Assembly (NCBI RefSeq): GCF_002113885.1
Contig: NW_018408800.1
Location: 262,907 to 326,906, forward strand
Direction: 5' to 3'
DNA length: 64,000 nt
Source of the DNA: Mizuhopecten yessoensis
Taxonomy: Eukaryota
Part shown: positions 22,501 through 48,270 of the stretch, one piece after another
How the letters are laid out: each line of letters begins with the position of its first letter
Position numbering within the stretch: the first letter of the stretch is position 1
The notes under the pieces: model-generated
Told to the model about the DNA's origin: nothing
Databases searched by the model: none
The model's input: only the letters and a program-made list of their open reading frames with translations
Position numbers and translations under genes: made by a program

Positions 22501-25500
22501 CAGCTCGCCGATCGAGTCTGCCGCATTCCTGTAAGGCAAAATTCATTATATAAGAGTTTTGATTAGTACTTGTTGCAGTGTTTACTTTCAGTTTATATCG
22601 CTCAAAGGAAAGCATTGCATCGACGAAGGATATTTGGTAGAGAATAGTACAACGATAAATTGCTAAGACATGCCTTGAACTACCTAATGACATATGCAGA
22701 TTTGGATTTGAAAACTAATGCGTATTTATTGTTAAATTTAAAATAGCTATTGTCGTAAAGTGATGCTCCGTTATAGTTGTGAGGATAGAGGTCAAAAGTA
22801 ATTTCCATATAAAGGTCATATTAAATGTATTTCGTGCATACGTTTCTAATATACTAGTGTGCGTATTGTGCTAATGATGTTTGGATAAAAATATAGACCT
22901 ACAAAAACATGCGAAATGACAATGATGAGGATGACATATGACCCGCCAGGTATATGTTGTAGCAATCCAGTTGAGGATGTAGCTGTTTCCGATCATTTAT
23001 GACAGATATGAGCTTAAGGAGATCGCATGTTTCATACAGGTACGTTGTTCAACAACATAATTAATTGACATTTGAATGATGATACTTACTGATAAACAAC
23101 ACATAAAATTTCACTGGGAGGAATTGTGTCCGACTCACAAGGTATATGACCAAGTGATCAATATGAGATCAAACTGACTACAGACAGAAGAATGTAAACT
23201 TAAAAGTATTAAGTCCTTAATACAAAACGTTTTGCAATGACTTTTGAAATATAACTTATTCATAAATAATGCGTGGGGTGACAACAATATGAATTGTGTC
23301 CAAGTTTTTTGATACTTTTGATGATACGTACTTATAGATAGCGTGTGGGATGACATCGATGTGGCTTGTTGTCGCTCCACAGGTTATATGACCTAGTGAC
23401 CTGAGTTCACTGGACGTAATGGTACTGCTATCCCCTCCCTTCAGTAGACTCAACCATCGTTCAAACACTGCCTTTTTCTTGAAATGAAAATAATCATCGT
23501 ATTAACCCACAAGATTTCCTCTTTCAATCATTGATGATTTTTTTCAAGTTACACTGTTAAAAGCTCAACTTAATATTTATATTCTAAATTTCACTTTCAT
23601 TTCTTCTCTTTGGTAGTTTTCAATGTCTTCAGCAACCTTCTCCAGCCCTACATTAAATCAAACTAGACCCTGACCTTAAGACTATCCCAACCATCGAACT
23701 GTCCGAGTCGACTGACGGCGTCCAGGTCTAGAGTGAGGGTACCGATCTGGGCCTCTGTCAGGGCCTGACATATCACACCAGTATTGTAGACGTTGGTGGT
23801 GGACCAAGTGGATGGGGCGCCCAAAACCTGAAACGATCATTATCATGATATGTTCATCTTATCTTATATCGAGTAGCTTTTGCCATTGTTTCCCAATGAT
23901 ATTGAGTTTAAATGGCATTACAGTAGAACAAAGTATATTTAAAAAATGTTATATTAGGTATCTGTTTTGAAGCTTCATTAGTTCAGTTTCTTCTATATAT
24001 TTTCTGATCAATAATTTTTCAATCGTTTACTACAGCGTCATCAAATACGCATTTTTGTTTCAAAGTCGTTCTTCTATTAAAATTAATAACCTTAATATAT
24101 CTAAGTAATGAGTATTGAGGCAAATAAGCACCAATAAATATTGGAATACCCAGGCACGAACTGTTCTACTAAAATAACAAGTTTGATTAGCAACACAAAG
24201 GAATATGCGGTTTAAAGCATTGGTTCTGTGTAGTCTGAAAACTCGAAATAACACATAATCAAATTTGCGATTCATATTGTTAGGACTGTCGAGTCAATTG
24301 ATAATAATTGGTGAATTGGTAAAATTTCAAACATTAAAAGATATAAAAGATGTTTACCGTATTCTACCGTATATTAATGTCCACTTACACTACTCCTCGT
24401 GGCGACGTCTAGAAGGGCCGTCTTTTGTGCGTCACTGTAGTCCGTTACTGATCCCAGTGTCTCTATGCAACTAGTGAACTCCTGATCAGCAAGGCTACTC
24501 AGCTGTGTTGTAGACAGGGCTGACACGCCTGCTGCGCCGAGTACTTGAATGTTACTACACGTCAGTGAGGCTGTAAGGTTAAGTAACAGTCATCAGGGCC
24601 ATAATGAATCAAACCTTATTATTTTTGTGACAGATAATCAAATTGATAAATGACATTTTATACTTTAATGAAAATCAAACTGAGATACGTTCAAGAAACA
24701 AAACTTCTAAATTCGTCACCATCACTTAATGCATTGTAACCAGTGTAGCGTCAGCAATTTTGTCACATACGTCATTCGTCCAAGATGATGGCACGTTACA
24801 AATGGTTCACCATTTCAAAATATCTATTGGAGAAGGAAAATCATACCTGTGGATCTTCTACGTCTGCGACTTCCAGCATTAGCTTTTGTATCTAATGCTT
24901 TCGCTATTTTTGTGTAGAATTTTTGCTCTCCACTGACAAATGCGGTCTCGTCATCCGAAGAAAATTCGTTTGATTTTCCTGACTGTTTTCGGGATTTAGT
25001 ACACTTCTTCTTTTCATTGTACTCATCTTGTATCGGTCCTGCTATGTCTAGTACAGTGTCCTAAAATGATTGAAATTGCAACTAAGGACACATAAGCATC
25101 AGTTTAAGAATATATTCCCGACATTCATATTTTGACTGGAGCAAGAAGAGAAGCCGAGATGAAGTTTCAAGAGCTAAAAATGTGTTTTCTAAGGACTCTG
25201 CGCCACAAGCCTATATTAACAACGTCACTTTACATGACATGATATACAGAAGTAGACAGTAGTTTAAATGCGACAACTTGAAATGTACTTACAACAGTGA
25301 TAGAATCGATAACAGTCTGCGGCAGGAGGGGGAATAAAGTCCCTAGCATTATGATTTCGTACGTCTTGATACTGTTCGTTCTGAAAATACAATGTCATTT
25401 TGAAATCGGAAGTATACTTACAATGATTCTCGGTCGAAGCTGATTATTGACATGAACGGTAATATTTTAAATAATAAATATATTTTCGTCCACAACTCAA

Positions 25501-28500
25501 CATATTAAATAAGTTGTTCAAATTTAAGGCAATTATACTAAATATATAATTGTGGTAGAAATTAAGTGATTAATATAAAGGTCGAATGAGGGTATTGATA
25601 AACGGAAAAAGGACGTAAATCCCTAATTGAAAATCCAATGTAGGGAGACAGTATCACATTTTTTGTATTTTCTGATGTTTAATCTTAAATATCAAATATA
25701 ATGAATATTGTGTGTTAATTATTGATAGAACAGTGTGCTCTTTCAATATTAAAGTATTTCAAAGCAATCCATGTATTAATACAGTTGTTTTTCATCAATG
25801 AGTCACATGTGTCCATTTTTCTGTATTTCAGGAAACCGGCTACCTATTTCACTACTATGAAGTTTTTCAAGAAAGATAACTCTTACATGCAATTACTATG
25901 AGTATATGGTTTTATTATAAAATGTAAATTTTTATCGTTTATAGAAAATTTATTTTACACAATTTCAGCATTTATTAAATTGATATACATTAATGCAATA
26001 CTTATCTATGGCAGTATCATTTTTATTGACATTATTTTGCAAAAAATTGTCTTTTTTTTCAACATTCACTCCTTTTTACATAAATTTCGATTTAAAATCC
26101 TAAAAATTCTGATAACCTATACTTTTTTTCTCTACTGAGAAATGGTGACACAATCCTATTACCTTAACAGAATATCATCACGATGTTTAACAAGCTGTAT
26201 TAGGATTTTTATCCGCACATGCAAGACGTGTGTACAAAAAAGTGAGTTAGGATTTACCTTACCTTCAACATGTCCTAACAACATACCACGTTATCAACTT
26301 CTGTCACTTTTAAATTAATTTAATGAATCGGGAAAGTAGTGTACCTGATTAAAATTGGTCTTCTTGAATTTTAGTTCTACTGCAAGCGGATTTATAATGT
26401 TAAATTTATTTAAATTTATTCCATTAGCAGTATTTATCGAACGTTAATAATGCTGTTTCGGAGATAGTCTATACTCCTAGGTTAACAATCTAAAGGTGGC
26501 TAATTGCCCTAAATAATGTATTTCATATCTTTTATAAATCCACTTACAATCCCTTTGCAGCAACAAAAGCGTTGACTAAAGCCTGTCTCTCAGCATTGCT
26601 CATGGGACATGTTCTTTGCATCCACATCACGTACTGTTCCAAAGCATCATTGTCCAGCCTTACATAATCAGTAGTGGTCATACCACAAACCATGTTTCCA
26701 ATTGATAACAAGTCGTCTGCGGTTATGGTTCCTGTAGTTTTGCTCTGTGTACAAAATTGTTATATTAATCATATAATTTGACTGTTACAACCAAAAACAT
26801 CGATCGATACAATGTACACCGGTCATTACAAGCTAATGTATTGAAAATTTGACTCAACTTCATTGAACACGCATACAAAATTCAAACCTGTTGCCTCCAC
26901 AACATTCATATTTACACCCCAATGTAGCCTCACAAAGTTCGTAACCTTACCTACAATATTAAATTACAATATTAAACTTACAAGACAGGTAATACTGTAG
27001 AGGTATTTCGCCTGAAGTTCTGTCTTTGAAAGAAGGTTGATATCAGCAAGCCCCAATTGCTCAACAATTGTCAAGCACATGGCAGAGCCGTACTTGTTCA
27101 GATCATCCTGTCTATAAAATACAAATACACATTCCTTTTTAATATTTGTATTAAATATTACGTGATCAGCAAAATTAATGGTTTTCCCCTATTATAAGTC
27201 GTATATATCTCAATAGCTAGTTAAGGAGAAATAATGCTTCGCATGACCTTAGATAAGTTCTGTACAGTTATAAAACAGATTGTTATGTTGTTATGTCAGT
27301 CAGCTAATTTATTAAGAATTCAGTTTTAAAACCTTATTACAGACTGAGCTCAATTAGTTCTGTATCATTTTAATAAATAAAATTCAAGTTTACTTTATCA
27401 AAATTATATATCTCAATACCGATGTTTAATTCGAGTTTTTTAAGTTAAATATGCTTTCACCATTCGTTTAAAGTTTACAGGGACCATACCGTACTTGCTT
27501 AACTTTAATTTATTTATAACGTACTTAATGTTGTGATTTTATCCCAGTCTCTCCTGCTTTTCATACCCCATCCACCCACTCCTAACCCCTCCATTTACAC
27601 CTCCATTCGGCACATTTAGTACAAAAAAGACCCCCAAAAGAAGGAACTAAAATAATATATCATCAATATCAATTTTAAACCAGCTGAGTGTGTAGCTTAT
27701 CTTACGTAAATTTGGCCATGATTTTAGGAGACATGTTTGCTAAGGTCGATGTGGTGGTTATTGCTTGAAGGTCCGCAGCCGACGTAGAATCAAAAGAAAG
27801 ATACTCTTTGATGAGGTTGTGTAGAAAAGAAATCTGAAAGAACGGAAAGTGAGGACGTATAATTTAAAACAAAATTGTAAGGTTAAACATTTATCAGGTT
27901 GTTTAAGGTAACGGTGTTTACAGAGAATCACATGTGCATGTTTTAATTCCGTAAATATAAACTTTATTATGTTCCGTTCATTTCACATTGTTTTGCAAAG
28001 CCATGGTTTGTAGATTTTTTTTAAAACAACACACAAACAAACAAAAACGAGATAATTTAAAAATAAATATTTGAACTGACCATATCGATGGTGACACATG
28101 AACTTTCGGTCAATTTGTTAAGGATATCAAAATAGAAACTGTCCTTTTCAATGCCATTTATCTGTTCATTTGTGAGTGCACATGTGTATGGGAGGATGTT
28201 GTTGATCCTCTGCAACGTTAACGTCACCGACAGTTTATCCATCTCCTCTTTCAGGAACCTAGCCTGCATTATATAAGAAGATACACATATCTAACAAAAA
28301 GAAAACAGATAAATTAAAGATCTGTAAAAGGTAGACATTTCATGATCTGCGGTCATTTGTAGTTCTAGCAGTTCTAGAAAAGATATTTTTCTTTTGTTTA
28401 TACTAGTTAAACTCTCAGTTACGGCCCCCAGGTCTATGATTTTGATGGTCTTTTCTGTCATGGTGTCACATCGTTTAAGTAATAGCTTTCCTGATATTAT

Positions 28501-31500
28501 ATGAATATTCAATATACTTTGATGCCTGAACTCCCGTCATAAAACCCTTTACATGACTCCTTATGTAAGAAAATGATTCCCGATCTTCTGAGATTAGGAA
28601 CTGAAGATCAACCTCATCATGTAAGAAACATATTTAGTTACTCCTGATGTGTGACTTCATTACCTAGCTTCTAATATTGAAAGTCTATTTCCTAGCTCCT
28701 CTTGTGTGACTACATTACCTAGCTTCTAATATTGAAAGTCTATTTCCTAGCTCCTGATGTGTGACTTCATTACCTAGCTTCTAATATTGAAAGTCTATTT
28801 CCTAGCTCCTGATGTGTGACTTCATTACCTAGCTTCTAATATTGAAAGTCTATTTCCTAGCTCCTGATGTGTGACTTCATTACCTAGCTTCTAATATTGA
28901 AAGTCTATTTCCTAGCTCCTGATGTGTGACTTCATTACCTAGCTTCTAATATTGAAAGTCTATTTCCTAGCTCCTGATGTGTGACTTCATTACCTAGCTT
29001 CTAATATTGAAAGTGTAAATCCTAGCTTCTGTTGCTATAAACTGATTCACGATCGCCTGAGTTAAGAAACCAGTTCCCTTACTCCTTATAATGGAAAACA
29101 AGTTTCCTATTCTTGTATTTAAAAATCGAAATTGAGTTAAAGTTGTAGTGGCCAGCTTAGTGTAACGTAAGACATCGTTGATAAACTGGATTGATGTTAT
29201 GTTGTCTAGCTTGGTGACGTTCGGACAACTGTAAGTAAACGAGAGGTGTTGATGCATGGGTATGGAGTATGGTCTCTGACTTGGCAAGTAAGCTTGAGTC
29301 GATGTTGCACTGCCTGGCTGGGTGTTGTTTGTGCACTGGACCTGATGTTTTGTTGCTTGGTTGAATGAGGTTTATGACATTTTGATAAATTAGTGATGAT
29401 GTAATACTACCTGTCTAAGTATGGTTTGTGACTTGGTAAATTAACTTAAGTTTAAGTTATACTGTCTGGCTGAGTGTTGTTTCTGAAATGGCATGTAAAC
29501 ATTTAAAGTCTATATTTGGTTCTTAATTTCATTATTTCACAATCATTGTATAAATGATGCGGACAGAATAATAGGATACACGCACCTGTTTTATTGTAAC
29601 TACAATATCGATTTTTGTGTTTTCTCCGGCAATATCAGTCATTGAAGATATCCCGTCAAGAAGTAAACTGATAGGTACTTCTCTAGCCAGGCTTGGTGAT
29701 TCAAGTACTGCCGTAAGACCAGCTCCTTCCACCATCTTCAAAATAACACATCAATATAACGACGTAACAAACAACAAAGGTAACTTCGACGATGATGAAT
29801 TACATTTCATAATTTCAATATCTATTTTATATTACATTAGACAATAATATAAAAGTATTGTTTTTATATTGTGTTTTTGTGATACCAAAGTTCTAGAACG
29901 TAGGGGTAAGTAACTTGACAAAAGAGACTAAAATTGTCGAACCCTGCGTTATCGCCCTTTAACATTAAAAAATCTTGATTAGAATTTAAAATTACGTTCA
30001 ACTATATTTTGATACATAATAACACCTTACAAAAATCTCATTATTGAAACGTCGGGGAACACTATACCTTTTCGAATAATTTACTTTTTACAGCTGCAGA
30101 CATGTCTAATTCATCGCTGGCCTTTTCTATGTCTGCGATAATATCTTTGGTAAAGGATGCAGCGGGTACTTTTGATATCCCATCAACCTCTAGACTATCA
30201 AGTACGACATTTACTCCTAAGGTTTTTATGTCGTTGCTGGACAAAGCTCCCTGCGGTAGAAAAAAATACAGCATTTCATCTTATTTAACTTTTTCGTCTT
30301 GTATTGAAGAGGTGGAAATGACATAAGGGTGATAACATATGACCTATGATAGACACTATCGGCAAAATATACATATGTAGTCAGTGTCGAATGCAATAGG
30401 CTCAGAACACATGTTTCCAGTGTCGGACGCTATCAACTCAGAACACATGTTTCCAGTGTCGGACGCTATCATCTAAGAACACATGTTTCCAGTGTCGGAA
30501 GCTATCGACTCAGAACATATGTTTCCAGTGTCGGACGCTATCGACTCAGAACACATGTTTTCAGTGTCGGACGCTATCAACTCAGAACACATGTTTTCAG
30601 TTTCGGACGCTATCGACTCAGAACACATATTTCCAGTGTCGTACGCTATCGGCTCAGAACACATGTTTCTAGTGTCAGACGCTATCGACTCAGACCAAAT
30701 GTTTCCAGTGTCGGACGCTATCAACCCAGAACACATGTTTTCAGTGTCGGACGCTATCGACTCAGAACACATATTTCCAGTGTCGGACGCTATTAACTCA
30801 GAACAAATGTTTCCAGTGTCGGACGCTATCAACTAAGAACACATGTTTCCAGTGTCGGAAGCTATCGACTCAGAACATATGTTTCCAGTGTCGGACGCTA
30901 TCAGCTCAGAACACATGTTTCCAGTGTCGGACGCTATTGACTCAGAACCCATGTTTCCAGTGTCGGACGCTATCGGCTCAGAACGCATGTTTCCAGTGTC
31001 GGACGCTATCAACTCATAACACATGTTTCCAGTGTCGGACGCTATCGACTCAGAACACATGTTTTCAGTGTCGGACGCTATCAACTCAGAACATATGTTT
31101 CCAGTGTCGGACGCTATCGACTCAGACCAAATGTTTCCAGTGTCGGACGCTTTCAACTCAGAACCCATATTTTCAGTGTCGAACGCTATCAACTCAGAAC
31201 ACATGTTTCCAGTGGCGGACGCTATCAACTCAGAACACATGTTTCCGGTGTCGGACGCTATCAACTCAGAACACATGCTTCCAGTGTCGGACGCTATCGG
31301 CTCAGAACACATGTTTCTAGTGTCGGACGCTATCGACTCAGACCAAATGTTTCCAGTGTCGGACGCTTTCAACTCAGAACACATATTTTCAGTGTCGAAC
31401 GCTATCAACTCAGAACACATGTTTCCAGTGTCGGACGCTATCAACTCAGAACATATGTTTACATTGTCGGACGCTATATACTCAAAACACAAATATCCAG

Positions 31501-34500
31501 TGTCGGACGCCATCAACTCAGAACATATGTTTCCAGTGTCGGGCGCTATCAAATCAAAACACATGTTTCCAGTATCGGACGCTATCAACCCAGAACACAT
31601 GTTTTCAGTGTCGGGCGCTATCAAATCAAAACACATGTTTCCAGTATCGGACGCTATCAACCCAGAACATATGTTTTCAGTGTCGGGCGCTATCAACTCA
31701 TAACACATGTTTCCAGTATCGGACGCTATCAACCCAGAACACATGTTTCCAACGTCGGACGCTATCAACCCAGAACACATGTTTCCAGTGTCGGACGCTA
31801 TCAACTCAGAACATATGTTTTCATTGTCGGACGCTATCGACTCAAAACACATATTTCCAGTGTCGGACGCTATCAACTCATAACACATGTTTCCAGTGTC
31901 GGACGCTATCGACTCAAAACACATATTTCCAGTGTCAGATGCTATCAACTCAGAAAACATATTTCCAGTGCCGGACGCTATCAACTCAGAACACATGTTT
32001 CCAGTGTCGGACGCTATCGCACAGTTCACATATGTAGCCAGTGCCGAACGCCATCGTACAGAACACATATGTAGCCGTGCCGGACGCCATCGTACAGAAC
32101 ACATATGTAGCCGTGCCGGACACTCTCGTACAGAACACATATGTAGCCAGTGCTTGACGCTCTCGCACAGAACACATATGTAGCCTGTGCCGGACACTAT
32201 CGTACAGAACACATGTGGCCGGACGCTATCGGCTCACAACATTTCACTAACTTCAGAAACATTTCGAATACGAAGCTTTATTTATACATTGTCTGATCAT
32301 TAGATAGTGTCTAAAGTTTCTTAACTTAGTAAAACATAGTAGATAACAAACTAATTTATTGTACGTATCAATATCCACTTAAAGTAAACATTATTTTAAG
32401 GAAAAACAAAACTTACATTGGAACCACTGCTATCGATTAACGCCTTCATCATCTTGCTGGCCTATCACAAATGAAAACAAATCATAGTATATTCGATTGC
32501 TATTTCACAACATGTGCTTGTAGAGTTTATCTTTGAAAACTATGTTCTGCATACCAAAATTGCTGAAAAAGTATTTAAGTTTTGAGCAATGGAGATCTGC
32601 TGTTGCAGCTAATTCTTTTTTTATTAATCAAAATAATTCAATTTGCAATGTATGTAAAATTAAATCTTTCAATAGAAACAATTCAATGATATTTATTACT
32701 CCTATTTCAAGCAGTTTTACTTTAAATATGTTTTAGGAATTTCTCTTACGGTTTTCCGAGAAGTTTTTCCAAAGCTGGCGACGTTGCTCATACCCGATAG
32801 TAACACTGAATCCTGGATCGATTCGAACTCAGCATCAGAGAGGTATCCCATCACTGGCGCGAAAACCGCCATTTTTGCGGCATCAAATGAAGAAGGATTG
32901 AAGTAGCTAGGTAAGTTCGTTCTGAACACATTCAGAATCTTTCTCATCTGTTGATTGAAAATGATATCATCACAAAGTGACTCGGTTAGATTTTAAGATA
33001 TTGTGTTTACAGCACTTTATTTTAGTTAGTAATGTGGTGAAGATGTTGTATTTATACAACTGATTTTAGGTCAGTTGTTTTTGTTATTTATCCTATAATG
33101 TATTTTTTTGTCCATAACATTAAAGCTGTTGTTCTGTTAATATCGTCGTACTTTTGCAATTGCTGTAGTATCTTGCACTGTAGTGTTGTATTATTTTAAA
33201 TCTTAAAATATCCTTTACCGTTGTATTTTGGTAAGATATATTGCCACATTACAACGATTAATGCCGTTGCATTATATATCACAACAACGATCAATCTACT
33301 TTTTGCTGGTTATAGTACAATGTATTTTCGCTAATTCGCGGGCATAGACGTAATCTCAAAAGAAGAAATGATCAAGGTAATAATTTGACACCTGTAAATG
33401 AATTAAAAAAAGGTTTATACTATTTGTCGACGTGTTAACTGATATAGTGTAGCTATGAAGTACTTATTACAGCCGTAAACATGTAATTTTCTTTAAAAGA
33501 GCGTGAGGAGGATCTGTTTATATCTGATTTGGGTTATTATAGTGGAATATCATATTTTGAAAACATATCCAGGATTGTTTTCACAGAATTGATACAGAAA
33601 TACGGTTATCCTGTGTGTCATTCATACGGGCGACACGAGAGACGCAGTTTCGACAACTATATATATCATTGTATCGGATTAGCGACCAATATAAGATTTT
33701 TAGCAGTCGTGTCTCAAACACTTTGAGTATACGTATTTATTAGATTTTACTAGTACAATATCAGGAATGATTAGTTTGATGAAAAAATAATATCTTCATT
33801 TCAGTTAAGAAATACGAAATAAATATATTTTTAGCTGATGATATATATATGATATATGTCGCCAAAGTTTCCGGTACTTAATTCTGCACTCAGTATATGC
33901 TGTGATATTTTGCCATAATATTTCGTTGCTCTCTTTAAAATGTAACAATATAGGAAATGCATCGTTTTTCCCGTTGGATACCATTTATATTCCATTGATA
34001 TGGTAGAAAACACTGATTTTTTCACTCACGCTCACCACTAGGAAAAAATATCAGTAACCCGTATACATGTGAAAATTTAGTATGCTATTCAATGGAAAAC
34101 CATTACTGTATATAAAAAGATGTTAACATTACCTGATACGGATCGATTTCTAGTAGAAATATCGCAGGAGCAGCCGTTTCTAACGCAGCAACATTTAACA
34201 GCAACATGTCGCTTTCTGTTAGCCCCGAAATCAGTCTAAAGGAGTGAAAAAGACCCACAGTGTATGGTTAACAAATTAAAACACGGAACTTGGAGCTGGG
34301 AGTTATTGCTCAAGACAAAAATATATAAAGAAGGCAGTGTATATATCTCCTTTTAAATCCATAAAAATTGTCTACATTAAGGTTAGTAAGCATATTAAAT
34401 AAATCCCTTTAAATTACTCAGAAAATATTCTACAATAAGGTTAATAAACATATTGAAAAAACAAATTCAGGATTCCAATAACCTGATATGACTATGTTAT

Positions 34501-37500
34501 ATAAAATGTTCTCAACAAAGCGATTTTGTAAATAATGTATGACTAAAGACATGATATTACATATACTATCTATGGATGTTTTTTGTAATTGAGGATAAGT
34601 TGAAACTACACATTTATTCAAGCACAGTGAAAAAGGTCGACGTTTGTCTGAGAGAATCTGCCAATCATAAAGCGATATTCCTGAACCAGGTGTACATGTA
34701 GGCCTACAATATAACCACTATGATAACCGGGAATGTCAACCCAAAGTTTTTTTCAAATGCATGTTTAATGACGGAATAGCAGTTTCTTTATCCGCACAGA
34801 TTGGTTTAAGGTTTTTATCAGTTTTTCTTGATATGAAGTGAATTTTACTGAACAACACCTGGAGTTCGATAGTCAAAGTATTTCCATTGTAATGGATTGA
34901 AAAAATACCAGTGCTATGATATTTCAATGCGTGGATAAAGGACGGACACTTTCAAGTCCTAAATGATATGGTTTACTACAATGTAGTACCTTGACGTAAA
35001 GAGTTCCTCAGCAGGTAGAAACATAATAAACCTTAGTTAATTAAATAATCTGACGGATGGAAGTTTGTTCGACTGAAGTTTCATCTAGACAACGTGCTCA
35101 TGATAAGTGTAGAATCCCTGTTCTCGCTTTTTGGATTATATTTCATGAATGACATTTATAGGAATTTCGTGACTTCTTGAATACTGGAATTGTATCGTGT
35201 ATTAAATAACTAGAAAATTCTTTTCAGACCATGGCTATGCATTTAACTATAGAAAACTTTAAAAGATTTTTTCGATGTGGAAATATTCGATTTTTTCGCG
35301 TTGATTACATTTGCGAAAATGAAAAGAGGCAAATATCAACTAATAGACTGTAAAATATTTTAAACCATTGCCATTGCAAAATGTCCAGCGATTTGTGTTA
35401 TAACGGGAACATTTCCACACGAGAAAGTTTCTTTCCCAGTTTACAAACCTGACAAGTTCTATGTGATAAGATAAATGTTATATATAATCTAATCAATCTC
35501 TATATAACAAGCTACAATAATTAGAAATATTAGCAATCTCTATATAATGGCCAAGCGAAAAAGGGTACTTACCCGATGATTTGCGAACTAGACAGTGCTG
35601 ACATGTCAATATCATCTTTGTTTTCTTCCAGAAATTTTACTTGATACTCTTTGGTCACTTTCGCCATATCAAGCTGTGACAAACTCTTTTAGGAAAAAGA
35701 TGAAAAACAAAAATGAATAGAAAGTCAGGTAACTCAGGAAACATTAAATATTCTTATTAGTCTGCGAAAAGGAGCAATATTAATCAAAATATGAATAAAT
35801 GAGATGAACTAATAAAATGAATCATAATGTTTCTGGAAAGGTAAACGATGCATTGATATATCTAGAATATTCAATTTCAAAATATATAAATTGTTCTATT
35901 TGTTATGGCTTATAATTGTTGTTACATTTTACTTTCTAAATGATGCTGCCATTTGAAAGAATTGTTTATTGATCTAGCCTATTATGGGTCATCTTATCTC
36001 CCAAAACCCTATAAGTTATTCCCCCAGACTCATTCGATAATTCTGCTAGGAGGTGGTACACTATTTTGATTACCCACTAGTGGGTAAAACCATGGACGTT
36101 ATTGCATTCGTCAGTCGTCTAATTATGACGTCATGTAGCAACGCTTTGCGACTTCACCTTCTGTTGTAACGTCATAGTTCATGGTCATTGTTTTACCGAT
36201 CGGAAACGGGCATAATTTATCCTAAAGAAACCTTATGGTTTTTGTTTTCTATATATCATTTCTAAACGTTGTAAAAGAAAAAGAGTTCCCTAACTCGAGA
36301 TGATTGATTATCATGTTTATCTAACTCTCGATGTTCATTTTCAAAATGTAAAAGTCACTCGGTAAACCTGGTGCCTTTATACAATTTAAGAATTAAATTA
36401 CGAGAGTTAACATGAAAACCAACCATCACTCCTTGGTGAAACTCTATGTATCACAAACAAATCATGAATATTATTGTAACATCGAGACATTGAAGCCCAT
36501 TGACAAGTAAATAAGTGAATAAATAAAAATTGTCTCTTAAATGCTGAGATTGTGAACGACATCCAAATGATTGTCAATTTTTTTAATATCATTTCGTTTC
36601 AATCGACAAGTTTATTAAATCAAATTATTGATAATAATATTGAGTTTTGATATGTCAAGTCAATATTTCCTCAATTACGACTGTTAACACAAAACTGGTC
36701 CAAACACCCCATTTCTTCATTACCGTTGACATTAATGTCAATAGTAATTTCATATTAAAATTGTTAAAGTTGGTTAAATTTTGTTTACAATCTCACAAAT
36801 CGACTTTAAGCGAAATAAGTAAGTCTGTCGATCATACATACTGCCGCTACTCCTAGGACGTCACTGAATAGCTTTGGTTCAGCACCGAATTCTTTCATCA
36901 GATCCACCCAGTCTCTCTGTGTGGCCGACGTTACATTCAGCATTTGACTCAACATATACTCCTTTAAACGTTTCTTGATGGCAAAAATTGCACCTTTCTG
37001 AAGTTCTTTGGCGATTGCTTTGATATTTACCATGCTAGAAACAAAACGGCCAAGCTGATAGTGGCATAGAACAAGACTATTTAGCTTAACCTCAACATAT
37101 ATGAAAACTGCAAAAAGAGGCTGAACTAATAATATCACAAAAGTTGTGATTATTGATAGATTACCTGATTAAGAGAAAGAAAGAACTCATCAGTATGCAT
37201 GTGTATTCGCCATAGGTATTACAAGAATTATTTTAAAATTAATACTTTTAGCTTGGGAAACCACTGCTTATTGTCTAAACTATTAATAATCGTTCATACC
37301 TTATTGTATTTGTTCTCAAAGATACCGTAGCCCTAATGTCATAAGACATCAAAAACAAGGTTATCCCAGGTTTATACTGTATACACGGTAAGTGATACTG
37401 TATAGTTTTGTTAAAGTTACCTGTTGTTCATTTGCAAAGGTCCTTGTTGCTCTGAATTCACGTTTTTACATTACAGAGTAAATAGCACAAAATAACAAGC

Positions 37501-40500
37501 GTCAGCATGTGTAGAATAAAAAGTCAGAGTGTTTCTAAATACAAGCTTCCAAAATAAAAATAAATGCCTGTTTAATTATTAAAATGACATTAAATCATGC
37601 TTTTTTTTTAATTCAGTTCAAACTTACGTTTCTACCATCACAGTAATAGGCATACTCATGTATTGCGCCTTATTTAACACCTCTGGGAACTGTTGTGCTG
37701 CCGTAATCCACTCATCTTCGGACCAGGTATCGTACGAATCCGTATCGACAATTTTTTTCTTCTCGTCAGTTGTCAAAGTCACTCCGTTACTCTGTCAATG
37801 CAACACTTTGTTTATACAAATCATGAAAATAATTCTTCTGGGTCTCACGGATATAAAGTTGCCGTATCAACACAACATATTGACTGGAGGAAAAGTTCTA
37901 AAATCATTTAATACACAAGAAAGTGGCAGTATGTTATCAACACTCTATATATTTCTAACGAATACTTACAAGTACTTACCTCAAGAATATTCACGCAACT
38001 CAATAAGTCTTTGATGACGATTTTGGTCAAGCAATCCTTAGATTTCCATCCGTTACAAACAACCCCCTTCTGTGCTAATGTCATACCGCTGAACACGCGT
38101 GTTTGAACTTCAGACTGTCCAAAATAATAGTAAAAATTGGATACTACTTTTCTTGTGCTTTTTGTATAGAAAATATGTTAATGCCATAAGAGCAGAATGC
38201 TCAGTTATCAATAAAGCATAAAGATCTATTATTGAAAATGTTATATGTTTCTTCAATAAAATAATTAATACTAGTTCGTGTAACAAACAAATTAAAGATA
38301 TTGATTTTTTTTAAAGAACCTGCTATGAAGGCTTTAAGTTCATAAAATTACCAAAATTCGTACCTTTTAAAACGGGAAAATCCACTTTCATGCCACGCAT
38401 GTGACACTTCATTTACAGTCTAACATTTTTTAATCGAATGTTCCGGTTTTAAACACATTCATGATAAGATAAATAAATAAATCACCATGGCCCTAAATGA
38501 CCACAGCCGCCAAACAAACAAACTAAAAAATGCTTGGTCACATGAAAGTATATTGCGGGATGCATTTAATCTTTTGGTGATATGCTGGTGATAGAATTAA
38601 CTATTATCTGTTGAATTGGTGAATTATAAACTGAAAGCATATATCCCTAACGGAGTATTACTAATTACTGTAACACAATGAGGTTTTCAAACCAAGCCAA
38701 TGATATAACATGATGTCGTACCTATCAGAAACCTACGAGAAAAGTACTTTAATTGAGTTGAGCTTTATGAGATATCTAATAACTATAATATCATTCACAA
38801 GTATTTATATAAAGCAAAGAAACGTATCACATCGTTTATACTAAAGAAGTAATCTGAACTTCGATACATGGAAATAACAATTGAAGTGAAATGTCACCAA
38901 AACAAAAGGCGAAACCAAATGTTCCAGCAGGGTAAGCGTTTCCTGTACCATGTAGTAGCCGTCCTGATATATTCCATAAAACCCAAGAAAGTATACAAGT
39001 CACCAACAACATATGACAGAGTGAACAAATCTTTAATATTTTGTAAACAACGACGTGCTAGAGGTTGCATTCAGAAAATGATGACCACTATAGAAAAGAT
39101 AAACATGTATTTAAAAGGGATTAACTTCCTCGCAATAGCTTAGACTTGCGCCTAGGAGGACAGCACCAAAAGGAAAGAACAGACAGAAAGAAAGACAGAG
39201 GGTGTTACAACGGGGTCACTAGATTTACCTGGTAATGGATCGATAACGAGGTCAGCCTTATTTTCATATGTATTATACATATATCTTAGGTGCAAAGCAT
39301 AACAAGTTCTATGATTACAGTTAGGTCATAGAGTAAGGATGCATTTTACAAATGTATTAAATGAAGAAACAGGACAAGACTATATAAAACCAATGCTGTA
39401 TCGGCAAAAACATCCAAGTAGTCAATATTGTGGTAAAAAAATGCTTTTCATACGAAAATTAATAGGTTTTGTTGTTAGCTACACAGGTAAGGTTTGTTTC
39501 TGTTTACAGACTAAAATGACGCAAAATATGATTTTGATAGTTTTTGATATCGGTCTAAGGATTGAAAATATCAATAAAAAGAATAATTTTTCTCTTAATA
39601 CAAAATTTCTCCCTTTTGTTACTACACCAATTTCACAAAAAAAGAAAGGAAACTAACATTGTATATACCCTGTCATAATCCTGTGATAACCCAACCTTAT
39701 ATACAATTAACTTTGTGTTTCTATCTTTGACTAGAATTACTTAAGTATTATACTACTAACCTTTAACATTGAAAATATTTCACCTGGAAACTGTTCAATT
39801 TGAGCGGCTGTAACGATAGAGGGATCGGCCAGGAAGTTTGCCAAATTCGTCTTGACAGCTGTGGTAAGTACAGCGAAGGCTCCGAAGAACGACTTAAATC
39901 CATCACATGTAGCTATCTGGATGTCAATTTTGAACGCTGAAACACATTTCAAAAGATTATTGTTTACCATTGTATGTTACGTACCAAGTTGGGCAGAAGA
40001 AGTGATTTGGGCAAGCATTTTTTAATCTTTAAAAAGTAAAAATGTTGTTGCTCAGGGAATATTTTAATGAAATTCATAAATGTCGTCTATATCTGGATGG
40101 TATTTTTGTTGTTGTTTTCATAAGATCCTGAGGCGGACAACAAGCAATACAGTCATCTATCTTTGATATTGAGTACATCACTACTAAGATGTTTTAATAT
40201 AACTTTTAGAATCAACAAATGCTATCTGTGCAATACAATCATAATCATATTATCTTTGTTAAAAGATTTCCTGATTAAACAGTTGTTTTCCAGATTATAT
40301 TTAATGATATATGTTTGTGCCTTGTTTGTAGTAATGTCAAGGGCGTCATAAACTCAACTTAAAATTTCTACTTTACTTGACTCTTAAATTGGGAAGTATG
40401 GCTTGCTATAGAGACGTTACTTCCCTTTACCAAAACTGGATATTGTAAACAAAACAGTAATACGACCTCCATTGATAAACCTGCGACAAATTATGATCAC

Positions 40501-43500
40501 GGTGACCCTTTGAATAGTTAAAGAATAATAAGACCAGGTGTTCCCAAAAGGTAAGTGATTTTTGCCACATCGATGACTCTAGATCAAGTCTTAGGAATGC
40601 CAACTTCTCAAACTAAGAGCCGAGAAGGTGACAACGAAACCAACAAAGTACATTAACAATATAGAGGTAGAATAGAATAGTTCTCAATAGGATCATGATA
40701 TCTACAATAAAACTGGCCTATACTTGCCTAAAAAACAGTTTATATGATTATACACATTTGCAAAAGTTCATAGTTTTATTTTGGTTATCTTTTGACATAA
40801 AAAAATACAGTATTGATCAACATTACTGTTTCACCTAGCCGAGCGGTACTACTTAGAACCTGCATTAAATATAATATGGCAATCTATCATTTAAACAATT
40901 CAATTGAAAGTAATTTTGTTCTTCTCTGTATTAACGATGTATGAAATACTGTTATGGCTTTTGGCTGTCGTAAATATGTGGTGATATCAACCTTAAACAG
41001 TTATATTGACCGGTCTTTGCAATTAGTTTCATATCACATCATTTTCACCATCCAAAAGGCCCATAATAGTACAATTTCTTTTTTATCATACAATATGCTA
41101 CATTAAACAGCTATGGCATAGATGTCGAACTTGCCAAATTTAAGTTCTTGATATTTCATAATGCATTGTGTTAATTTATACTTACTACCCATCTCTTTGA
41201 ACTGTTGAAAGGCAGTTAACCACACTTGTTCTGCAGTAAACGTAGATAAAATGTCTCCATATTCATCTAAAGCCATACATTTCTTTTTAGCAACCCCACA
41301 ATACACACAGCTTTTCGGGCATTTGTATTTAAACGTTTCTGTTGGAGAAAACGTTGTTACTATCACACTAGAGACATGTGCATGTCCAGTAGTTCCTTGA
41401 ATAATAGATGCAGTTCTATCCTGGGAATGTCCATGTCCTCCTTTAGTCCTAGGTGGTCTGTCATATGAGGTAGACATGTCCTGGGAGTGTTCATGTCATC
41501 CTTTAGTCTTAGGTGGTCTGTCATATGAGGGAGACGTGTTGGAATAATCCTGGGTGTGTTCATGTCCTCCTTTAGTCCTAGGTGGTCTGTCATATGAGGG
41601 AGAAATGTTGGAATAATCCTGGGAATGCCCACGTCCTCCTTTAGTCTTAGGTGGTCTGTCATTTCTCCCTCATATGACAGCCTTCCTAGGACTAAAGGAG
41701 GACATGTTGGAATAATGCTGGGAATGCCCACGCCCTCGTTTAGTCTTAGGTGGCTTGTCATATGAGGGAGAGATGTTGGAACAATCCTGGGAATGCCCAC
41801 GCCCTCGTTTAGTCTTAGGTGGTCTGTAATATGAGGGAGACATGACCTGGGAGTGTTCATGACCTCCTTTAGTCTTAGGTAGTCTGTCATATGAGGTAGA
41901 CATGTCCTGGGAGTGTTCATGTCCTCCTTTAGTCTTAGGTGGTTTGTCATATGAGGGAGAAATGTTGGAACAATCCTGGGAATGCCCATGTCCCCCTTTA
42001 GTCTTAGGTGGTCTGTCATATGAGGGAGACATGTCCTGGGAGTGTTCATGCCCTCCTTTAGTCTTAGGTGGTCTGTCATATGAAGGAGACATGTCCTGGG
42101 AGTGTTCATGTCCTCCTTGAGTCTTAGGTGGTTTGTCATATGAGGGAGAAATGTTGGCCCAATCCTGGGAATGCCCATGTCCCCCTTTAGTCTTAGGTGG
42201 ACTGTCATATGAGGGATACATGTCCTGGGAGTGTTCATGTCCTCCTTTAGTCTTAGGTGGTCTGTCATATGAGGAAGACATGTTGGAACAATCTTTGGAA
42301 TGCCCACGTCCTCCTTTAGTCTTAGGTTCCTTGTCATTTGAGGGAGACAGGTTGGAACAATCCATGGAATGCCCATGTCCTCCTTTAGTCTTAGGTGGTT
42401 TGTCATATGAGGCAGACATGTCCTGGGAGTGTTCATGTCCTCCTTTAGACTTAGGTGGTCTGTCATATGAGGAAGACATGTTGGAACAATCTTTGGAATG
42501 CCCACGTCCTCCTTTAGTCTTAGGTTCCTTTTCATTTGAGGGAGACAGGTTGGAACAATCCATGGAATGCCCATGTCCTCATTTAGTCTTAGGTGGTTTG
42601 TCATATGAGGGAGACATGTCCGGGGAGTGTTCATGTCCTCCTTTAGACTTAGGTGGTCTGTCATATGAGGTAGACATGTCCTGGGAGTGTTCATGTCCTC
42701 CTTTAGTCTTAGGTGGGCTGTCATATGAGGGATGCATGCTGGAATAATCCTGAGAGTGTTCATGTCCTCCATTAGTCCTAGGTGGTCCCATAGGAGGAAT
42801 TGAAAGTGAGAGGCCACTCATTGTTCCACCAACTTGAGTTTTGGTTGGATGAATGGATGCGGGATATGACTCTGTGCTAAATGGAGGTCTGTTTGTTGAG
42901 ACTCGCATCGGGATCGTTGCATGTGTCCACGGCACTACAAAGTGAAATACTATCAGGATCACGTAGGCCCTTGAACACGTGTTACTGTATCCTAAAAGGG
43001 ACACTTTGGTATTGTGTCAAACGGGTTTCTGATTAAATTTGTTCTCCAAACTAGCATTAGCTTTGATAAAAAAACCTTTTGAAAATGATATCAAAATAAA
43101 TAGAGTCGTACGGCACTTCATTTACGAAAGTTTTGTTTTAGTCATTATGCTTACCTTTAATTTGTCCATGTAACGATAAATACTAGACAATAAAGCGTAC
43201 ATACAGTTAAATTGTCAGAAAAATATCATCAAGTGAAACCTGCATGTATAAAAGTACTTCTTTGCATTGCATGGCAGTTTTAGGCCGTTTTCCCACAAGT
43301 GTCCCGTTTTGGGTACAGTGACGTTACAGTGTCCATTGACTATAATGAACGAATCCTGTCACACACACATTTTAATCAAATAGTCCAATTACACTCATTG
43401 GTTATGATGAACGATGTCTGTCGCACTCATATATAAGAACGAACTAGTGCAATAAAAGTACGTGTGTTAACATGAACAAGGCATATCACACCTAAATAAA

Positions 43501-46500: not shown

Positions 46501-48270
46501 TAAAATACATACCTTGGACACCAAGCACCACTGCAAGGAAAAAACAGTATTTGATTCACTCAGTTATTTTAGCGTATTCGCAACCAATTAGTATTTTCTC
46601 CTTGAGCTTATTTATATCATTAAATGTCAATAATCCGTGCCAGTTAACAGACGAAGAGAACATTATGTGAATCGAAAAAGACAAGGCAATCACTGATACC
46701 GATAGTTTCGAAAGGAAATGTCCCTGAAGTTGAGAATGTGAAATGATCTACTTACAATGGTCACCTTAAAATTACGTTTGTTTTCATGTGTGCAGTGGGT
46801 AAATCTTTGTGAAATACAAGTCCACTCAGAAAAGAGAAGTCATATATATAAACTATTGTTTACCCGGTGTTACTATAATTTACACTACGGTAATGGAATG
46901 CCCGATACGCAATACGGAAATGACGACAGGAAAATACGACAAGAAAAACATGTGTATTACGAAGGGTGGAAAGTCCTGAAGATATGGTTGTTAACAACTG
47001 CAAATTTTGGAAATAATTTTGATTGTTTTGCTTTTCATTTAGTAAAAACCTGAAATGCTATTTTGCTTCAAAACTCTTTAATTGTTTTTAATCAAAACCT
47101 CTATCATCTTTTCTCACTATCTTGTATTTACCCCTTTGTATATATTGACACGGACTTAGATAGCAAGGACTTAGTCTAATCTAATTCCGTGATATTGATA
47201 TCAAGTTTTATAGAAACAAATGTATTTAAGATGACGCCATTATGGAGAAAACATAAATGTAACAAAAACCAATCATTACATCATTACATATACTAGGAAT
47301 TGAACTAGGCAGGGTCCAAACACGACATATTTTGAATAGTGGTCAATGATGTCAAAGGGGCGATTAGTCCTTACGACTAAATTACGTTTCAGTACAAGCT
47401 TTGTTAAAGGCTGTTATTGTAACGGCGTATTGCTCATTTAACGGTTGAATCTTGCCTCTGTTGATCTCATGATGCATTGAGTTTGTCTTAAGAATGGAAT
47501 TAAAAAATAATAAACTCTTTTTCCTCGAAAGATTATTCAATGGCCCTGTGTAATATAATTCATCTATTATATACCTAAGTCTAGGTGATAATACGTTTCT
47601 CGCCGAGAGAGTGAGTCGAGTATACATAATTATGTGTTTTTTTTGTCAGAACTACATCCTCGATATCCAGGGGTTATGCTCACTAAAAAAAAGTGACCAA
47701 TCGCTAGGCTGTCCTTTGAAGATTACAAAGGAGCTACACTCGACTTCAAAGCCTGTCGAGTTTTACCGACCGCGAGATTCGTTTGATGTACATCAAAGGA
47801 TCGAACTGGTCTTCTTGTCTCATCAACAACGTGGCGCACACTGAGCCTTCAATTTGGCTATGGCATATTCCAGGGGTGCAGAGAGCGAAAGTGAGCATAA
47901 CCCCTGGATATCGAGGATGTAAAAACTAAGGGAACCCTTTGAAGTCGAAGCACGGTCAAGCTACTTCATCATCAAATGTTTTTCACCACCTTTGGTATCT
48001 TAAAAATAATGAAATTGCTACTTTTGGCTAATAGGTAAAAATGTGTTATTCTTCTTTAAAACTGAGAATTAGAAAACTAGTTAAAAGAACACTTTTTCTT
48101 AACACGACCAAGAGTATTAACTTATTTCAAGCTCAGTCAAGCCTCTACCGTCTCCCCCTCCTTGTATTAGACAATACTAAACGTTATTGGTACGAAGACT
48201 TTTATTTAATAAAGCAAATTAATACAATTAACTTACCTCCGTAAAGGAGAGCACAACAAAACCACGCCAT
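19581..48270 (-). CDS. Gene B: otoancorin-like (OTOA/STRC/MSLN family) GPI-anchored glycoprotein, 26 exons, ~1175 aa if the short exon 3 is used
   Basis: Exons: 48237-48270, 46513-46530, 41186-41338 (long form to 42934 has stops), 39761-39936, 37980-38114, 37628-37791, 36842-37034, 35573-35685, 34133-34235, 32750-32947, 32417-32461, 30068-30250, 29586-29735, 28081-28263, 27706-27833, 26982-27111, 26548-26744, 25293-25380, 24847-25060, 24389-24570, 23675-23827, 23332-23477, 22386-22528, 21854-21951, 20505-20631, 19581-19654. Sum is 3528 nt, in frame to TAG. Signal peptide MAWFCCALLYGVVLGVQ. C-terminal motifs resemble the otoancorin/stereocilin family: LTCSNIQ..QLSSLADQEFTSCIETLG, LGAPSTWS, LRSLGHITCG, AYGSDVTTW..NIGITIGGL, IPPATFAGFTVEQ. 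Hydrophobic tail DNGAGTVTSSVMLALVLSLAVVYQ*. Confidence 0.85.
20057..20359 (-). mobile_element. tRNA-derived SINE in the last intron of gene B
   Basis: Minus strand: GGCAGTCTAGTGGT (A box), GGTTCGAGTC (B box), central TTGAGCAAG..CAGCTGTAAATGAGTAC, LINE-like tail ending in (TTA)n. Confidence 0.75.
20729..21410. mobile_element. Possible degraded hAT-like MITE
   Basis: Starts TAGGGTTG, with clusters of AACCG(A/T)T sub-terminal motifs at both ends; the right TIR is degraded. Confidence 0.35.
25620..26165 (-). repeat. Dispersed repeat, copy 2, inverted relative to copy 1 (gene B intron 17)
   Basis: TTGAAAATCCAATGTAGGGAGACAGT ... TTCAGGAAACCGGCTACC ... CACAATCCTATTAC. Confidence 0.8.
28641..29025 (+). 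repeat. 55-bp minisatellite, 7 copies (gene B intron 13)
   Basis: Unit CTCCTGATGTGTGACTTCATTACCTAGCTTCTAATATTGAAAGTCTATTTCCTAG. Confidence 0.95.
30400..32230 (+). repeat. 36-bp minisatellite, ~45 regular plus ~5 divergent copies (gene B intron 11)
   Basis: Unit GAACACATGTTTCCAGTGTCGGACGCTATCAACTCA; explains the repetitive ORFs on both strands. Confidence 0.95.
41420..42790 (-). repeat. 60/69-bp tandem repeat encoding (PPKTKGGHEHSQD[CSN]MSPSYDR)n; disrupted or intronised part of gene B exon 3
   Basis: ORFs 42579-43004, 41670-42563 and 41103-41477 share one frame, separated by TGA at 42579-81, 41670-72 and 41496-98. A 198-bp higher-order period is visible (42271 vs 42469). Confidence 0.85.
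43350..43770 (+). repeat. Highly degenerate ~30-bp tandem repeat
   Basis: Recurrent ACAC(A/G)TGT..TAGAATGAAC..GTC motif. Confidence 0.4.
47655..47919. mobile_element. MITE with perfect 30-bp terminal inverted repeats and TA target-site duplication (gene B intron 1)
   Basis: TA-CATCCTCGATATCCAGGGGTTATGCTCACT at the left end and AGTGAGCATAACCCCTGGATATCGAGGATG-TA at the right end; no coding capacity. Confidence 0.85.

What the first reader, a model, noticed from the sequence alone, without database searches (positions are those of the whole stretch)
41186..42934. Gene B's His-rich repeat exon appears to be undergoing intronisation, rescued by an internal acceptor
From a phase-1 acceptor at 42935-36 (or 42992-93) the frame runs through ~21 His/Pro/Ser/Lys units into YKCPKSC and the conserved donor at 41186, mirroring gene A's 816-nt exon. 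It carries three TGA stops, two of them GGA>TGA, while all 23 downstream exons are clean. A strong phase-1 acceptor (GTAAC..TTTTCTCCAACAG|AA, 41339-40) sits just before the Cys motif and gives an intact 1175-aa protein. Alternatives are a recent null allele, an NMD-coupled long isoform, a short secreted His-rich peptide ending at 42579, or TGA read-through.
Basis: partly seen in the sequence, partly recalled or inferred. Interest (0 to 1): 0.7.

Follow-up and report, generated by a model that had tools for sequence, protein, structure and literature searches.

The report
Broken His-rich repeat exon in scallop gene
In the Yesso scallop reference genome, the large exon that encodes the histidine-rich front end of an otoancorin/mesothelin-like surface protein carries three stop codons while the rest of the gene is intact; this is most likely a freshly disabled allele (or partly an assembly fault), and the proposed rescue by an inner splice site is possible but unproven.

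Summary
On the minus strand, a 1,749-nt phase 1-1 exon (42934→41186) runs through about 20 His/Ser/Pro/Lys units (60 or 69 nt) into the YKCPKSC motif. It has three in-frame TGAs: 42581-79, 41672-70 and 41498-96.

New here:
- The middle stop lies in a 47-nt inverted segment (41706-41660).
- The organism is Mizuhopecten yessoensis. RefSeq XP_021374529.1 (135 aa) is exactly exon 1 + an 18-nt mini-exon + this exon up to the first TGA, so the only annotated product uses the outer acceptor (42934).
- The syntenic Argopecten irradians orthologue has an open 1,482-nt His-rich exon in the same phases, so the exon is ancestrally coding.
- Twenty-one downstream exons chain into 1,104 open codons.

The rescue by the inner acceptor (CAG at 41341-39) fits in phase and would give a clean signal-peptide junction. 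But five phase-1 AGs follow the last stop. No protein with that junction, or with the Cys-motif exon at all, was found.

This is a fragmented assembly, and two contigs that look like the other haplotype stop inside the array, so assembly error stays open.

Verdict: real feature, interpretation partly supported, modest interest.

The parts
48237..48270 (-). Gene B exon 1: ATG at 48270, 34 nt (MAWFCCALLYG + 1 nt), phase-1 donor G|GTAAGT
   Evidence: It is the start of XP_021374529.1. The 21-nt hairpin-like motif at 48301-48281 matches gene A's motif at 12159-12139.
46513..46530 (-). 18-nt mini-exon (..VVLGVQ), phase 1 in and out. It completes the signal-peptide hydrophobic core.
   Evidence: It is contained in XP_021374529.1.
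42935..42993 (-). Two outer phase-1 acceptors: AG 42993-92 (cccttttag|GA) and AG 42936-35 (cactttgtag|TG). The second is the one used by the RefSeq model.
41186..42934 (-). Long exon, 1,749 nt, phase 1-1. It holds a unique N-terminal part (42934-42771), the His-rich array (42770-41442, with a partial last unit to about 41420), a linker, and the Cys motif.
   Evidence: Orthologous exon: L009:19169-20650.
42579..42581 (-). Stop 1, TGA (GGA>TGA). It is private to one copy of a roughly 97%-identical 198-nt higher-order duplicate. It is the end of the 135-aa RefSeq ORF.
41660..41706 (-). 47-nt inverted copy of the repeat unit (42/47 to the reverse complement), bounded by CATG palindromes. It contains stop 2 (TGA 41672-41670). 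The unit becomes 99 nt, so the downstream frame is kept.
41496..41498 (-). Stop 3, TGA (GGA>TGA), private to one unit
41339..41360 (-). Candidate inner 3' splice site: branch-point-like GTAAC (41360-56), TTTTCTCC (41351-44), CAG (41341-39). The exon would start at 41338 in phase 1.
   Evidence: The sequence is identical in the second-haplotype contig C82097. Usage is untested.
41186..41338 (-). Short (153-nt) version of the exon: E-TFKYKCPKSCVYCGVAKKKCMALDEYGDILSTFTAEQVWLTAFQQFKEMG, donor A|GTAAGT
   Evidence: 48% identity to Argopecten P0003 456-512
21850..39936 (-). 20 further downstream exons of gene B (39936-39761 ... 21951-21850). Together with the 153-nt Cys-motif exon (41338-41186) they make the 21-exon chain that gives 1,104 open codons. 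At least two more exons follow (20648-~20530 and ~19703-19604).

Best explanation
**What the gene is.** Gene B is the Mizuhopecten yessoensis orthologue of Argopecten irradians 'mucin-3B-like' XP_069125417.1. It is one of two tandem paralogues of a secreted protein that is probably otoancorin/mesothelin/stereocilin-like. Its second coding exon after an 18-nt mini-exon ancestrally encodes a long His-rich low-complexity N-terminal module fused to a Cys motif.

**What happened (shown in the assembly).** In the reference haplotype this module has lost coding constraint. It carries three young lesions, each private to one unit: two GGA>TGA changes and a 47-nt inverted segment that brings in a TGA.

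**Consequence (inferred).** By default the exon is still spliced in from its own outer acceptor, as RefSeq models it. The main mRNA therefore ends after 135 codons, giving a truncated secreted His-rich peptide, and is probably NMD-prone. The reference allele is then a freshly disabled null or hypomorphic allele whose 3.3-kb body has not yet decayed. The inner acceptor at 41338 is at most a cryptic or minor escape route. Intronisation is a possibility, not a demonstrated state.
For: **Sequence.**
- Three in-frame TGAs and the inverted segment.
- Each lesion is private to one unit. Stop 1 is one of 7 differences between two 198-nt duplicates, so it is younger than that duplication.

**Annotation.**
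- P0001 = XP_021374529.1 (LOC110463915, M. yessoensis, no isoform label) equals exon 1 + mini-exon + 42934..42582 exactly.
- An 18-nt exon is very unlikely to be called without transcript alignments (inference).
- No protein containing the M. yessoensis Cys-motif exon exists among 1.84e9 representatives.
- No protein of 498-1,584 aa contains exon 32947-32750.

**Ancestral coding state.**
- The Argopecten orthologue, syntenic with the Ank/SAM gene, has an open 1,482-nt exon in phase 1-1.
- Its repeat shows a synonymous excess: 8 synonymous : 10 non-synonymous unique variants, P=0.03.
- The M. yessoensis array shows 10:39, the random expectation.

**Body and acceptor.**
- The downstream body is intact: 1,104 codons, no stop.
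- The inner acceptor is average for this gene and is one of 5 phase-1 AGs after the last stop.
Against: - No reads were seen, so neither the stops nor the splice pattern is verified.
- Three lesions upstream against none in 3.3 kb downstream is unlikely (about 0.04) if the whole gene were drifting at one rate. This favours continued selection on the body, and hence some bypass, unless the array mutates faster.
- The neutral-looking variation among units suggests the array has been unconstrained for longer than a 'fresh' null allele implies.
- The absence of a full-length RefSeq protein is an argument from a database whose coverage of this annotation I could not measure.
Confidence: 0.4

Rival explanations
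1. The PTC-laden 1,596 nt have effectively joined the upstream intron. Transcripts splice 46513→41338 and make a signal peptide (MAWFCCALLYGVVLGVQ) joined directly to ETFKYKCPKSC and an intact protein of about 1,175 aa. This would be intronisation by a 3' splice-site shift, as in the Catania-Lynch model.
For: - The removed piece is 3n (1,596 nt), lies at the 5' end of the gene, is low-complexity and holds PTCs. These are the features listed in PMC2586383.
- The inner site has a branch-point-like GTAAC, a pyrimidine tract and CAG, and sits in the right phase.
- The junction gives a plausible signal-peptide end.
- All three lesions lie upstream of it and 1,104 downstream codons are open (P about 0.04).
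- Array variation looks unconstrained.
- The site is identical in the other haplotype contig.
Against: - There is no transcript or protein evidence for the junction.
- RefSeq's single product uses 42934.
- No protein with the Cys-motif exon is in the searched collections.
- The site is not stronger than 42934 or 42991, and four other phase-1 AGs follow the last stop.
- The same AG is present in Argopecten simply because of its codons (AGA GAC), so it is not a new feature.
Confidence: 0.25
2. Assembly artefact or haplotype mosaic. The array was mis-resolved in a fragmented draft assembly. In the animal the exon is open, or each haplotype carries fewer lesions, and the gene is normal.
For: - The assembly has 82,659 contigs.
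- Two contigs that look like the second haplotype (C81281 at 99.5% identity, C82097 at 94.4%) stop at 42701 and 41462, exactly at the edges of the array. So the array was resolved only once.
- A 47-nt inverted piece bounded by palindromic CATG is the kind of thing local gap filling can produce.
- From my own knowledge, not checked here: this reference was built from short reads.
Against: - There are no Ns in the window.
- The two GGA>TGA changes are single-base novelties that mis-joining of real units cannot create.
- The higher-order copies differ at about 3%, not 0%, so they are not simple collapse or duplication artefacts.
- The inversion keeps the unit at 99 nt (3n) and has diverged at 5/47 from the consensus.
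Confidence: 0.2
3. Gene fission. The 135-aa secreted His-rich peptide is itself the functional product of LOC110463915, and the body is a separate or dead gene.
For: RefSeq annotates exactly this ORF. It keeps the signal peptide and three repeat units.
Against: - It has no homologue of similar size.
- The ORF ends at a unit-private GGA>TGA inside a recent duplicate.
- The body has no signal peptide of its own downstream of the stops.
Confidence: 0.05
4. TGA is decoded, by selenocysteine or programmed read-through, so the long exon is translated whole.
For: All three stops are TGA.
Against: - No SECIS or any Rfam family is found in the 64-kb window.
- Two stops are plain GGA>TGA changes in single units, and the third sits in an inverted, scrambled unit.
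- The Argopecten orthologue has no TGA there.
Confidence: 0.02
5. The array was never coding here: an intronic minisatellite that happens to be open.
For: - Other minisatellites in this gene's introns also give long ORFs (36-nt array at 30401-32214, a 466-aa ORF).
- Unit variation is neutral in all frames.
- The +1 frame is fully open.
Against: - The orthologue has a His-rich repeat in the same exon and phase, and it is under purifying selection.
- Both unit lengths are 3n (60 and 69 nt).
- Conservation continues upstream of the inner acceptor.
- The RefSeq model includes the 5' end of the exon.
Confidence: 0.03

Closest known systems
Intronisation of PTC-containing exonic sequence (Catania & Lynch 2008, PMC2586383; Irimia et al. 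2008, cited therein)
   Same: The segment is a formerly coding, 3n-long, 5'-located, low-complexity piece with premature stops. A splice site exists that would remove it and keep the frame.
   Different: No splicing evidence was obtained. The event would be a 3' splice-site shift that enlarges an existing intron, not the birth of a new one. The only annotated product still includes the segment.
Young (unitary) pseudogene or segregating null allele with a premature stop
   Same: There are in-frame stops and a rearrangement in an exon that is open in the orthologue. RefSeq's ORF is truncated at the first stop.
   Different: All lesions sit in one repeat exon, and 1,104 downstream codons are untouched. 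Expression status is unknown.
Argopecten irradians XP_069125417.1 'mucin-3B-like' (positional orthologue)
   Same: - Same neighbour (Ank/SAM gene).
- Same 34-nt first exon and the same upstream hairpin-like motif.
- Same phase 1-1 long exon with an N-terminal His/Ser/Tyr/Pro-rich repeat followed by the Cys motif.
- 44-56% identity in the well-aligned downstream exons.
   Different: - Its repeat is 21 x 17 aa (SGSYSGHHPSGYSQPYM), open and constrained.
- The unit sequences of the two species are not demonstrably homologous (BLASTP E=0.35).
Gene A, the tandem paralogue in the same window (exon 8248-7433)
   Same: Same architecture: a 34-nt first exon, a phase-1 long exon, a low-complexity repeat and then the Cys motif (YSCPKECSYC).
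   Different: - Its repeat is an unrelated Pro/Asn/Thr/Arg unit.
- Its exon is open throughout.
- I did not look for a mini-exon in it.
- The AG nearest its Cys motif is in phase 2.
Otoancorin / mesothelin / stereocilin superfamily
   Same: - The nearest named ESM-Atlas clusters by features and by structure belong to it.
- One exon gives a weak Pfam Stereocilin hit.
- The protein is long, apparently helical-repeat and secreted, and has an RRRRR site.
   Different: No Pfam model reaches its threshold. Membership is a lead, not shown.

Membership tests
Intronisation (exon-to-intron conversion) | The segment was coding in the ancestor | tested here: met
   The orthologous Argopecten exon is open over 1,482 nt, in the same phases, with a synonymous excess in its repeat. 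Conservation runs 11 aa upstream of the inner acceptor.
Intronisation (exon-to-intron conversion) | The segment carries premature stops and its length is a multiple of three | tested here: met
   Three TGAs are present, and the removed piece 42934-41339 is 1,596 nt. This is shown in the assembly only, not in reads.
Intronisation (exon-to-intron conversion) | Splice signals exist that remove the segment and keep the frame | tested here: met
   GTAAC, then TTTTCTCC, then CAG|AA in phase 1, with a pyrimidine score within the range of the gene's own acceptors. However, 5 such AGs exist after the last stop.
Intronisation (exon-to-intron conversion) | Transcripts actually lack the segment (alternative or constitutive splicing) | not testable with these tools
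Indirect evidence is negative: the RefSeq product uses 42934, and no protein with the inner junction or the Cys-motif exon was found.
Pseudogene / null allele | Disabling lesions in sequence that is open in orthologues | tested here: met
Pseudogene / null allele | Decay spread over the gene, or loss of expression | tested here: not met
   21 downstream exons give 1,104 open codons. Expression was not testable.
Selenoprotein / TGA recoding | SECIS element in the transcript | tested here: not met
   No Rfam family at gathering threshold anywhere in the window.
Otoancorin/mesothelin/stereocilin superfamily | Pfam Mesothelin (PF06060), Stereocilin (PF21058) or Otoancorin_N domain above threshold | tested here: inconclusive
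   - Exon by exon, the only hit is Stereocilin at E=0.074, 12.6 bits against a cut-off of 26.6.
- P0003 gives no Pfam hit and no PDB hit.
- The Atlas feature score is 0.89 to 'otoancorin-like', and the structural TM-score is 0.45 to a Stereocilin cluster. These are leads only.

The most novel reading that the evidence does not exclude
A caught-in-the-act intronisation. A 1.6-kb, formerly coding His-rich repeat has acquired stops and is being absorbed into the upstream intron through a pre-existing inner 3' splice site. The otoancorin-like body of the protein is kept under selection, and the long, PTC-bearing form persists as a minor NMD-targeted isoform.
Probability: 0.25. Interest if true: 0.65.

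Novelty: new member of a known kind. Interest (0 to 1): 0.35.

Why it matters
If RNA data showed the inner acceptor in use, this would be a rare natural snapshot of the transient stage predicted by the intronisation model. The ancestral state is preserved in a sister genus and in a paralogue 30 kb away.

As it stands, it mainly matters for annotation. RefSeq LOC110463915 (135 aa) is the truncated head of a roughly 25-exon gene whose body appears to have no protein model in the collections searched. The locus also shows how a tandem array can break both an assembly and a gene model.

Tried and rejected
- **Word-index protein searches.**
  - The 302-aa inter-stop ORF gave nothing among proteins of 166-528 aa.
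  - P0003 440-905 and P0003 790-880 found only P0003 itself.
  - So no other scallop orthologue and no M. yessoensis body protein could be fetched.
- **Exact look-up.** The look-up of encoding contigs for P0001 found nothing on record.
- **DNA comparison of genes A and B.** They are too diverged at the DNA level. tblastx was needed.
- **Family assignment.** Pfam on 19 exon pieces and on P0003, and the PDB sequence search, gave no significant family.
- **Structure prediction.** MAFFT of exon fragments against P0003 shredded three fragments, so I ran no further search on it.
- **Homology of the repeat units.** Homology between the two species' repeat units is not demonstrable.
- **Literature.** There are no hits for the accession numbers, and nothing on otoancorin-like proteins in bivalves.
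- **+1 frame.** The fully open +1 frame (484 codons) was considered as the real frame and rejected:
  - it has only about 40% of the stop-prone sites;
  - it cannot reach the Cys motif;
- **Joined model.** The joined spliced protein of gene B was built only inside local scripts to count stops.
Full report
**1. What is in the sequence**

The feature lies on the minus strand. From the acceptor tttgtag|TG (AG 42936-35) the frame that leads into YKCPKSC is open for a 54-residue unique stretch. It then passes through 20 full units and one partial unit. The units are of two lengths, both multiples of three: 60 nt (GGHEHSQDMSPSYDRPPKTK) and 69 nt (GGHGHSQDCSNMSPSYDRPPKTK). A short linker and the Cys motif follow, and the exon ends at the donor A|GTAAGT after 41186.

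- The exon is 1,749 nt long, phase 1 at both ends.
- It holds exactly three stops, all TGA.
- 42581-79 and 41498-96 are single-base GGA>TGA changes against the unit consensus.
- 41672-70 is different. It sits in a 47-nt piece (41706-41660) that matches the reverse complement of the unit at 42/47. The piece is bounded by the palindrome CATG and makes that unit 99 nt long, so the frame downstream survives.
- Each lesion is private to one unit.
- Stop 1 is one of only seven differences between two 198-nt higher-order copies. It is therefore younger than that duplication.
Both are phase 1.

**2. The gene**

Exon 1 is ATG 48270 to 48237 (34 nt, phase-1 donor). An 18-nt mini-exon follows at 46530-46513.

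An exhaustive HMMER search with the last repeat units plus the Cys-motif exon returned three proteins.

- P0001 (135 aa) is XP_021374529.1, 'uncharacterized protein LOC110463915', from Mizuhopecten yessoensis. It equals exon 1 + mini-exon + 42934 down to the first TGA, letter for letter.
- P0003 (905 aa) is XP_069125417.1, 'mucin-3B-like', from Argopecten irradians.
- The third hit is a bacterial Cys-repeat protein and is spurious.

**3. The orthologue shows the ancestral state**

The Argopecten locus (L009) lies next to an ankyrin/SAM gene, as gene B does in the window (ankyrin-like ORF 52373-53728). It is more similar to gene B (48-54%) than to gene A (31-33%). The shared features are these.

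- The same 34-nt first exon.
- The same hairpin-like motif just upstream of the ATG.
- A long exon of 1,482 nt in phase 1-1, open throughout. It encodes 21 tandem 17-residue units (SGSYSGHHPSGYSQPYM), a linker and the Cys motif.

The alignment of the two proteins starts 11 residues upstream of the M. yessoensis inner acceptor (SSVIVTTFSPTE / ASVITTTAIPRD). Four of those codons differ only synonymously.

The repeat units of the two species share composition but are not demonstrably homologous.

**4. Constraint**

| Array | Synonymous unique variants | Other unique variants | Random expectation (synonymous) | Test |
|---|---|---|---|---|
| Argopecten | 8 | 10 | 22% | synonymous excess, P=0.03, coding frame only |
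| M. yessoensis | 10 | 39 (2 of them stops) | 21-22% | matches random |

- The M. yessoensis counts match the random expectation, and no frame there shows a synonymous excess.
- The difference between the two species is suggestive only (Fisher P=0.065).
- The +1 frame is open for 484 codons across the M. yessoensis array. It has fewer stop-prone codons and cannot reach the Cys motif, so I give this no weight.

**5. The rest of the gene**

tblastx against gene A (extended with L010 and L011) and against Argopecten gives collinear, open blocks.

- A GT-AG chain with consistent phases exists for 21 exons from 41338 to 21850.
- It gives 3,313 nt, or 1,104 codons, with no stop.
- Weighted by stop-prone sites and by length, the chance that all three lesions fall upstream of the inner acceptor is about 0.04 if the whole gene drifted at one rate.
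- This favours continued selection on the body, unless the array mutates faster, which tandem arrays often do.

The joined model was used only for this local count.

**6. The proposed rescue**

Joining 46513 to 41338 is in frame and gives MAWFCCALLYGVVLGVQ-ETFKYKCPKSC, a tidy signal-peptide end. Several points weigh against giving this much significance.

- The site's pyrimidine content (0.55) is average for this gene's acceptors (0.40-0.85). It is below that of 42934 (0.65) and 42991 (0.60).
- Five phase-1 AGs lie between the last stop and the Cys motif.
- The same AG exists in Argopecten purely because of its codons.
- The one database product of the locus carries no isoform label and uses 42934.
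- No protein holding the M. yessoensis Cys-motif exon was found among 1.84 billion representatives.
- No protein of 498-1,584 aa holding exon 32947-32750 was found.

An 18-nt exon in a Gnomon model implies transcript alignments; this is my inference. On that basis the available expression evidence points to the outer acceptor.

**7. Assembly caveat**

Two small contigs are near-identical copies of the flanks: C81281 (99.5%) and C82097 (94.4%). They end at 42701 and 41462, the two edges of the array. I take them for the second haplotype; that reading is an inference from the identity values. If it is right, the array was resolved once and may be a mosaic.

Against a pure artefact, the two TGAs are single-base novelties, and the higher-order copies differ by about 3%. 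The inner acceptor and both outer acceptors are identical in these contigs. No other copy of the array or of the Cys-motif exon exists in the genome, apart from gene A and a third, distant member on C3616.

**8. Other readings**

- No SECIS or any other Rfam family occurs in the window, so recoding of TGA is unsupported.
- A never-coding minisatellite is contradicted by the orthologue.
- The 135-aa peptide as a product in its own right has no relatives.

**9. What the protein is**

- Pfam and PDB sequence searches give nothing significant.
- One exon hits Stereocilin weakly (E=0.074), and two exons hit ALTTAQ_rpt weakly.
- The ESM-Atlas places the Argopecten body nearest to otoancorin-like, mesothelin and stereocilin clusters (0.89 by features, TM 0.45 by structure).

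I treat this as the likely superfamily, not as shown.

**10. Verdict**

Its key step, use of the inner acceptor, is untested, and the little indirect evidence there is leans against it as the main form.

| Reading | Estimate |
|---|---|
| Real lesions with the long exon still the default (fresh null or hypomorph) | 0.40 |
| Functional bypass (intronisation) | 0.25 |
| Assembly artefact or haplotype mosaic | 0.20 |
| Remaining readings together | 0.10 |
| Not assigned to any listed reading | 0.05 |

The concept is known (PMC2586383). This would be a new, still unproven instance.

Noticed in passing
window 30401-32214 (minus strand): A 36-nt minisatellite of about 50 copies lies in the intron between gene B exons 32947-32750 and 30250-30068. 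It reads as a 466-aa open frame (units like ASDTGNMCSELI). It is a warning that long ORFs in this genome's arrays need not be coding.
   Followed up: partly
window 48281-48301, 12139-12159; L009:9970-9992: The hairpin-like motif AAGTCCC(T/C)GCTGGTC(A/G)GGGAT lies just upstream of the start codons of genes B and A. It is also present upstream of the Argopecten orthologue's ATG (AAGTCCCTGCTGGTTGGGGAT), where the stem would be kept by G-U pairs.
   Followed up: partly
G000:C81281:1-1734 (L002) and G000:C82097:3577-5199 (L003): These contigs are near-identical copies of the array's flanks, most likely the second haplotype. They terminate at the two edges of the His-rich array. L003 is only 94.4% identical to the window over 1.6 kb of intron, with 15 gap openings, so local heterozygosity is high.
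   Followed up: partly
window 24847-25060 (minus strand): This gene B exon encodes ...NAGSRRRRRSTG..., a poly-Arg stretch that looks like a furin-type cleavage site. It recalls the processing of the mesothelin precursor (from memory, not tested).
   Followed up: no
window 23083-23157 (minus strand): A degenerate partial duplicate (SLGHIPCESDT...) of exon 23477-23332 (SLGHITCGATT...) lies in the following intron.
   Followed up: no
window 52373-53728 (minus strand); L009:1-1022: An ankyrin-repeat gene (ankyrin/SAM in the Argopecten record) lies upstream of gene B in both scallops. This conserved synteny fixes the orthology.
   Followed up: partly
L009:25299-25598: The Argopecten RefSeq model (905 aa) ends by reading on past the exon that matches window 32947-32750. 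No further homologous exons appear in the next 10 kb, so that model is probably truncated at its 3' end.
   Followed up: partly
G000:C3616:70273-70893: This is a third, distant member of the family. The Cys-motif exon matches at 45% identity and the following exon at 35%.
   Followed up: no
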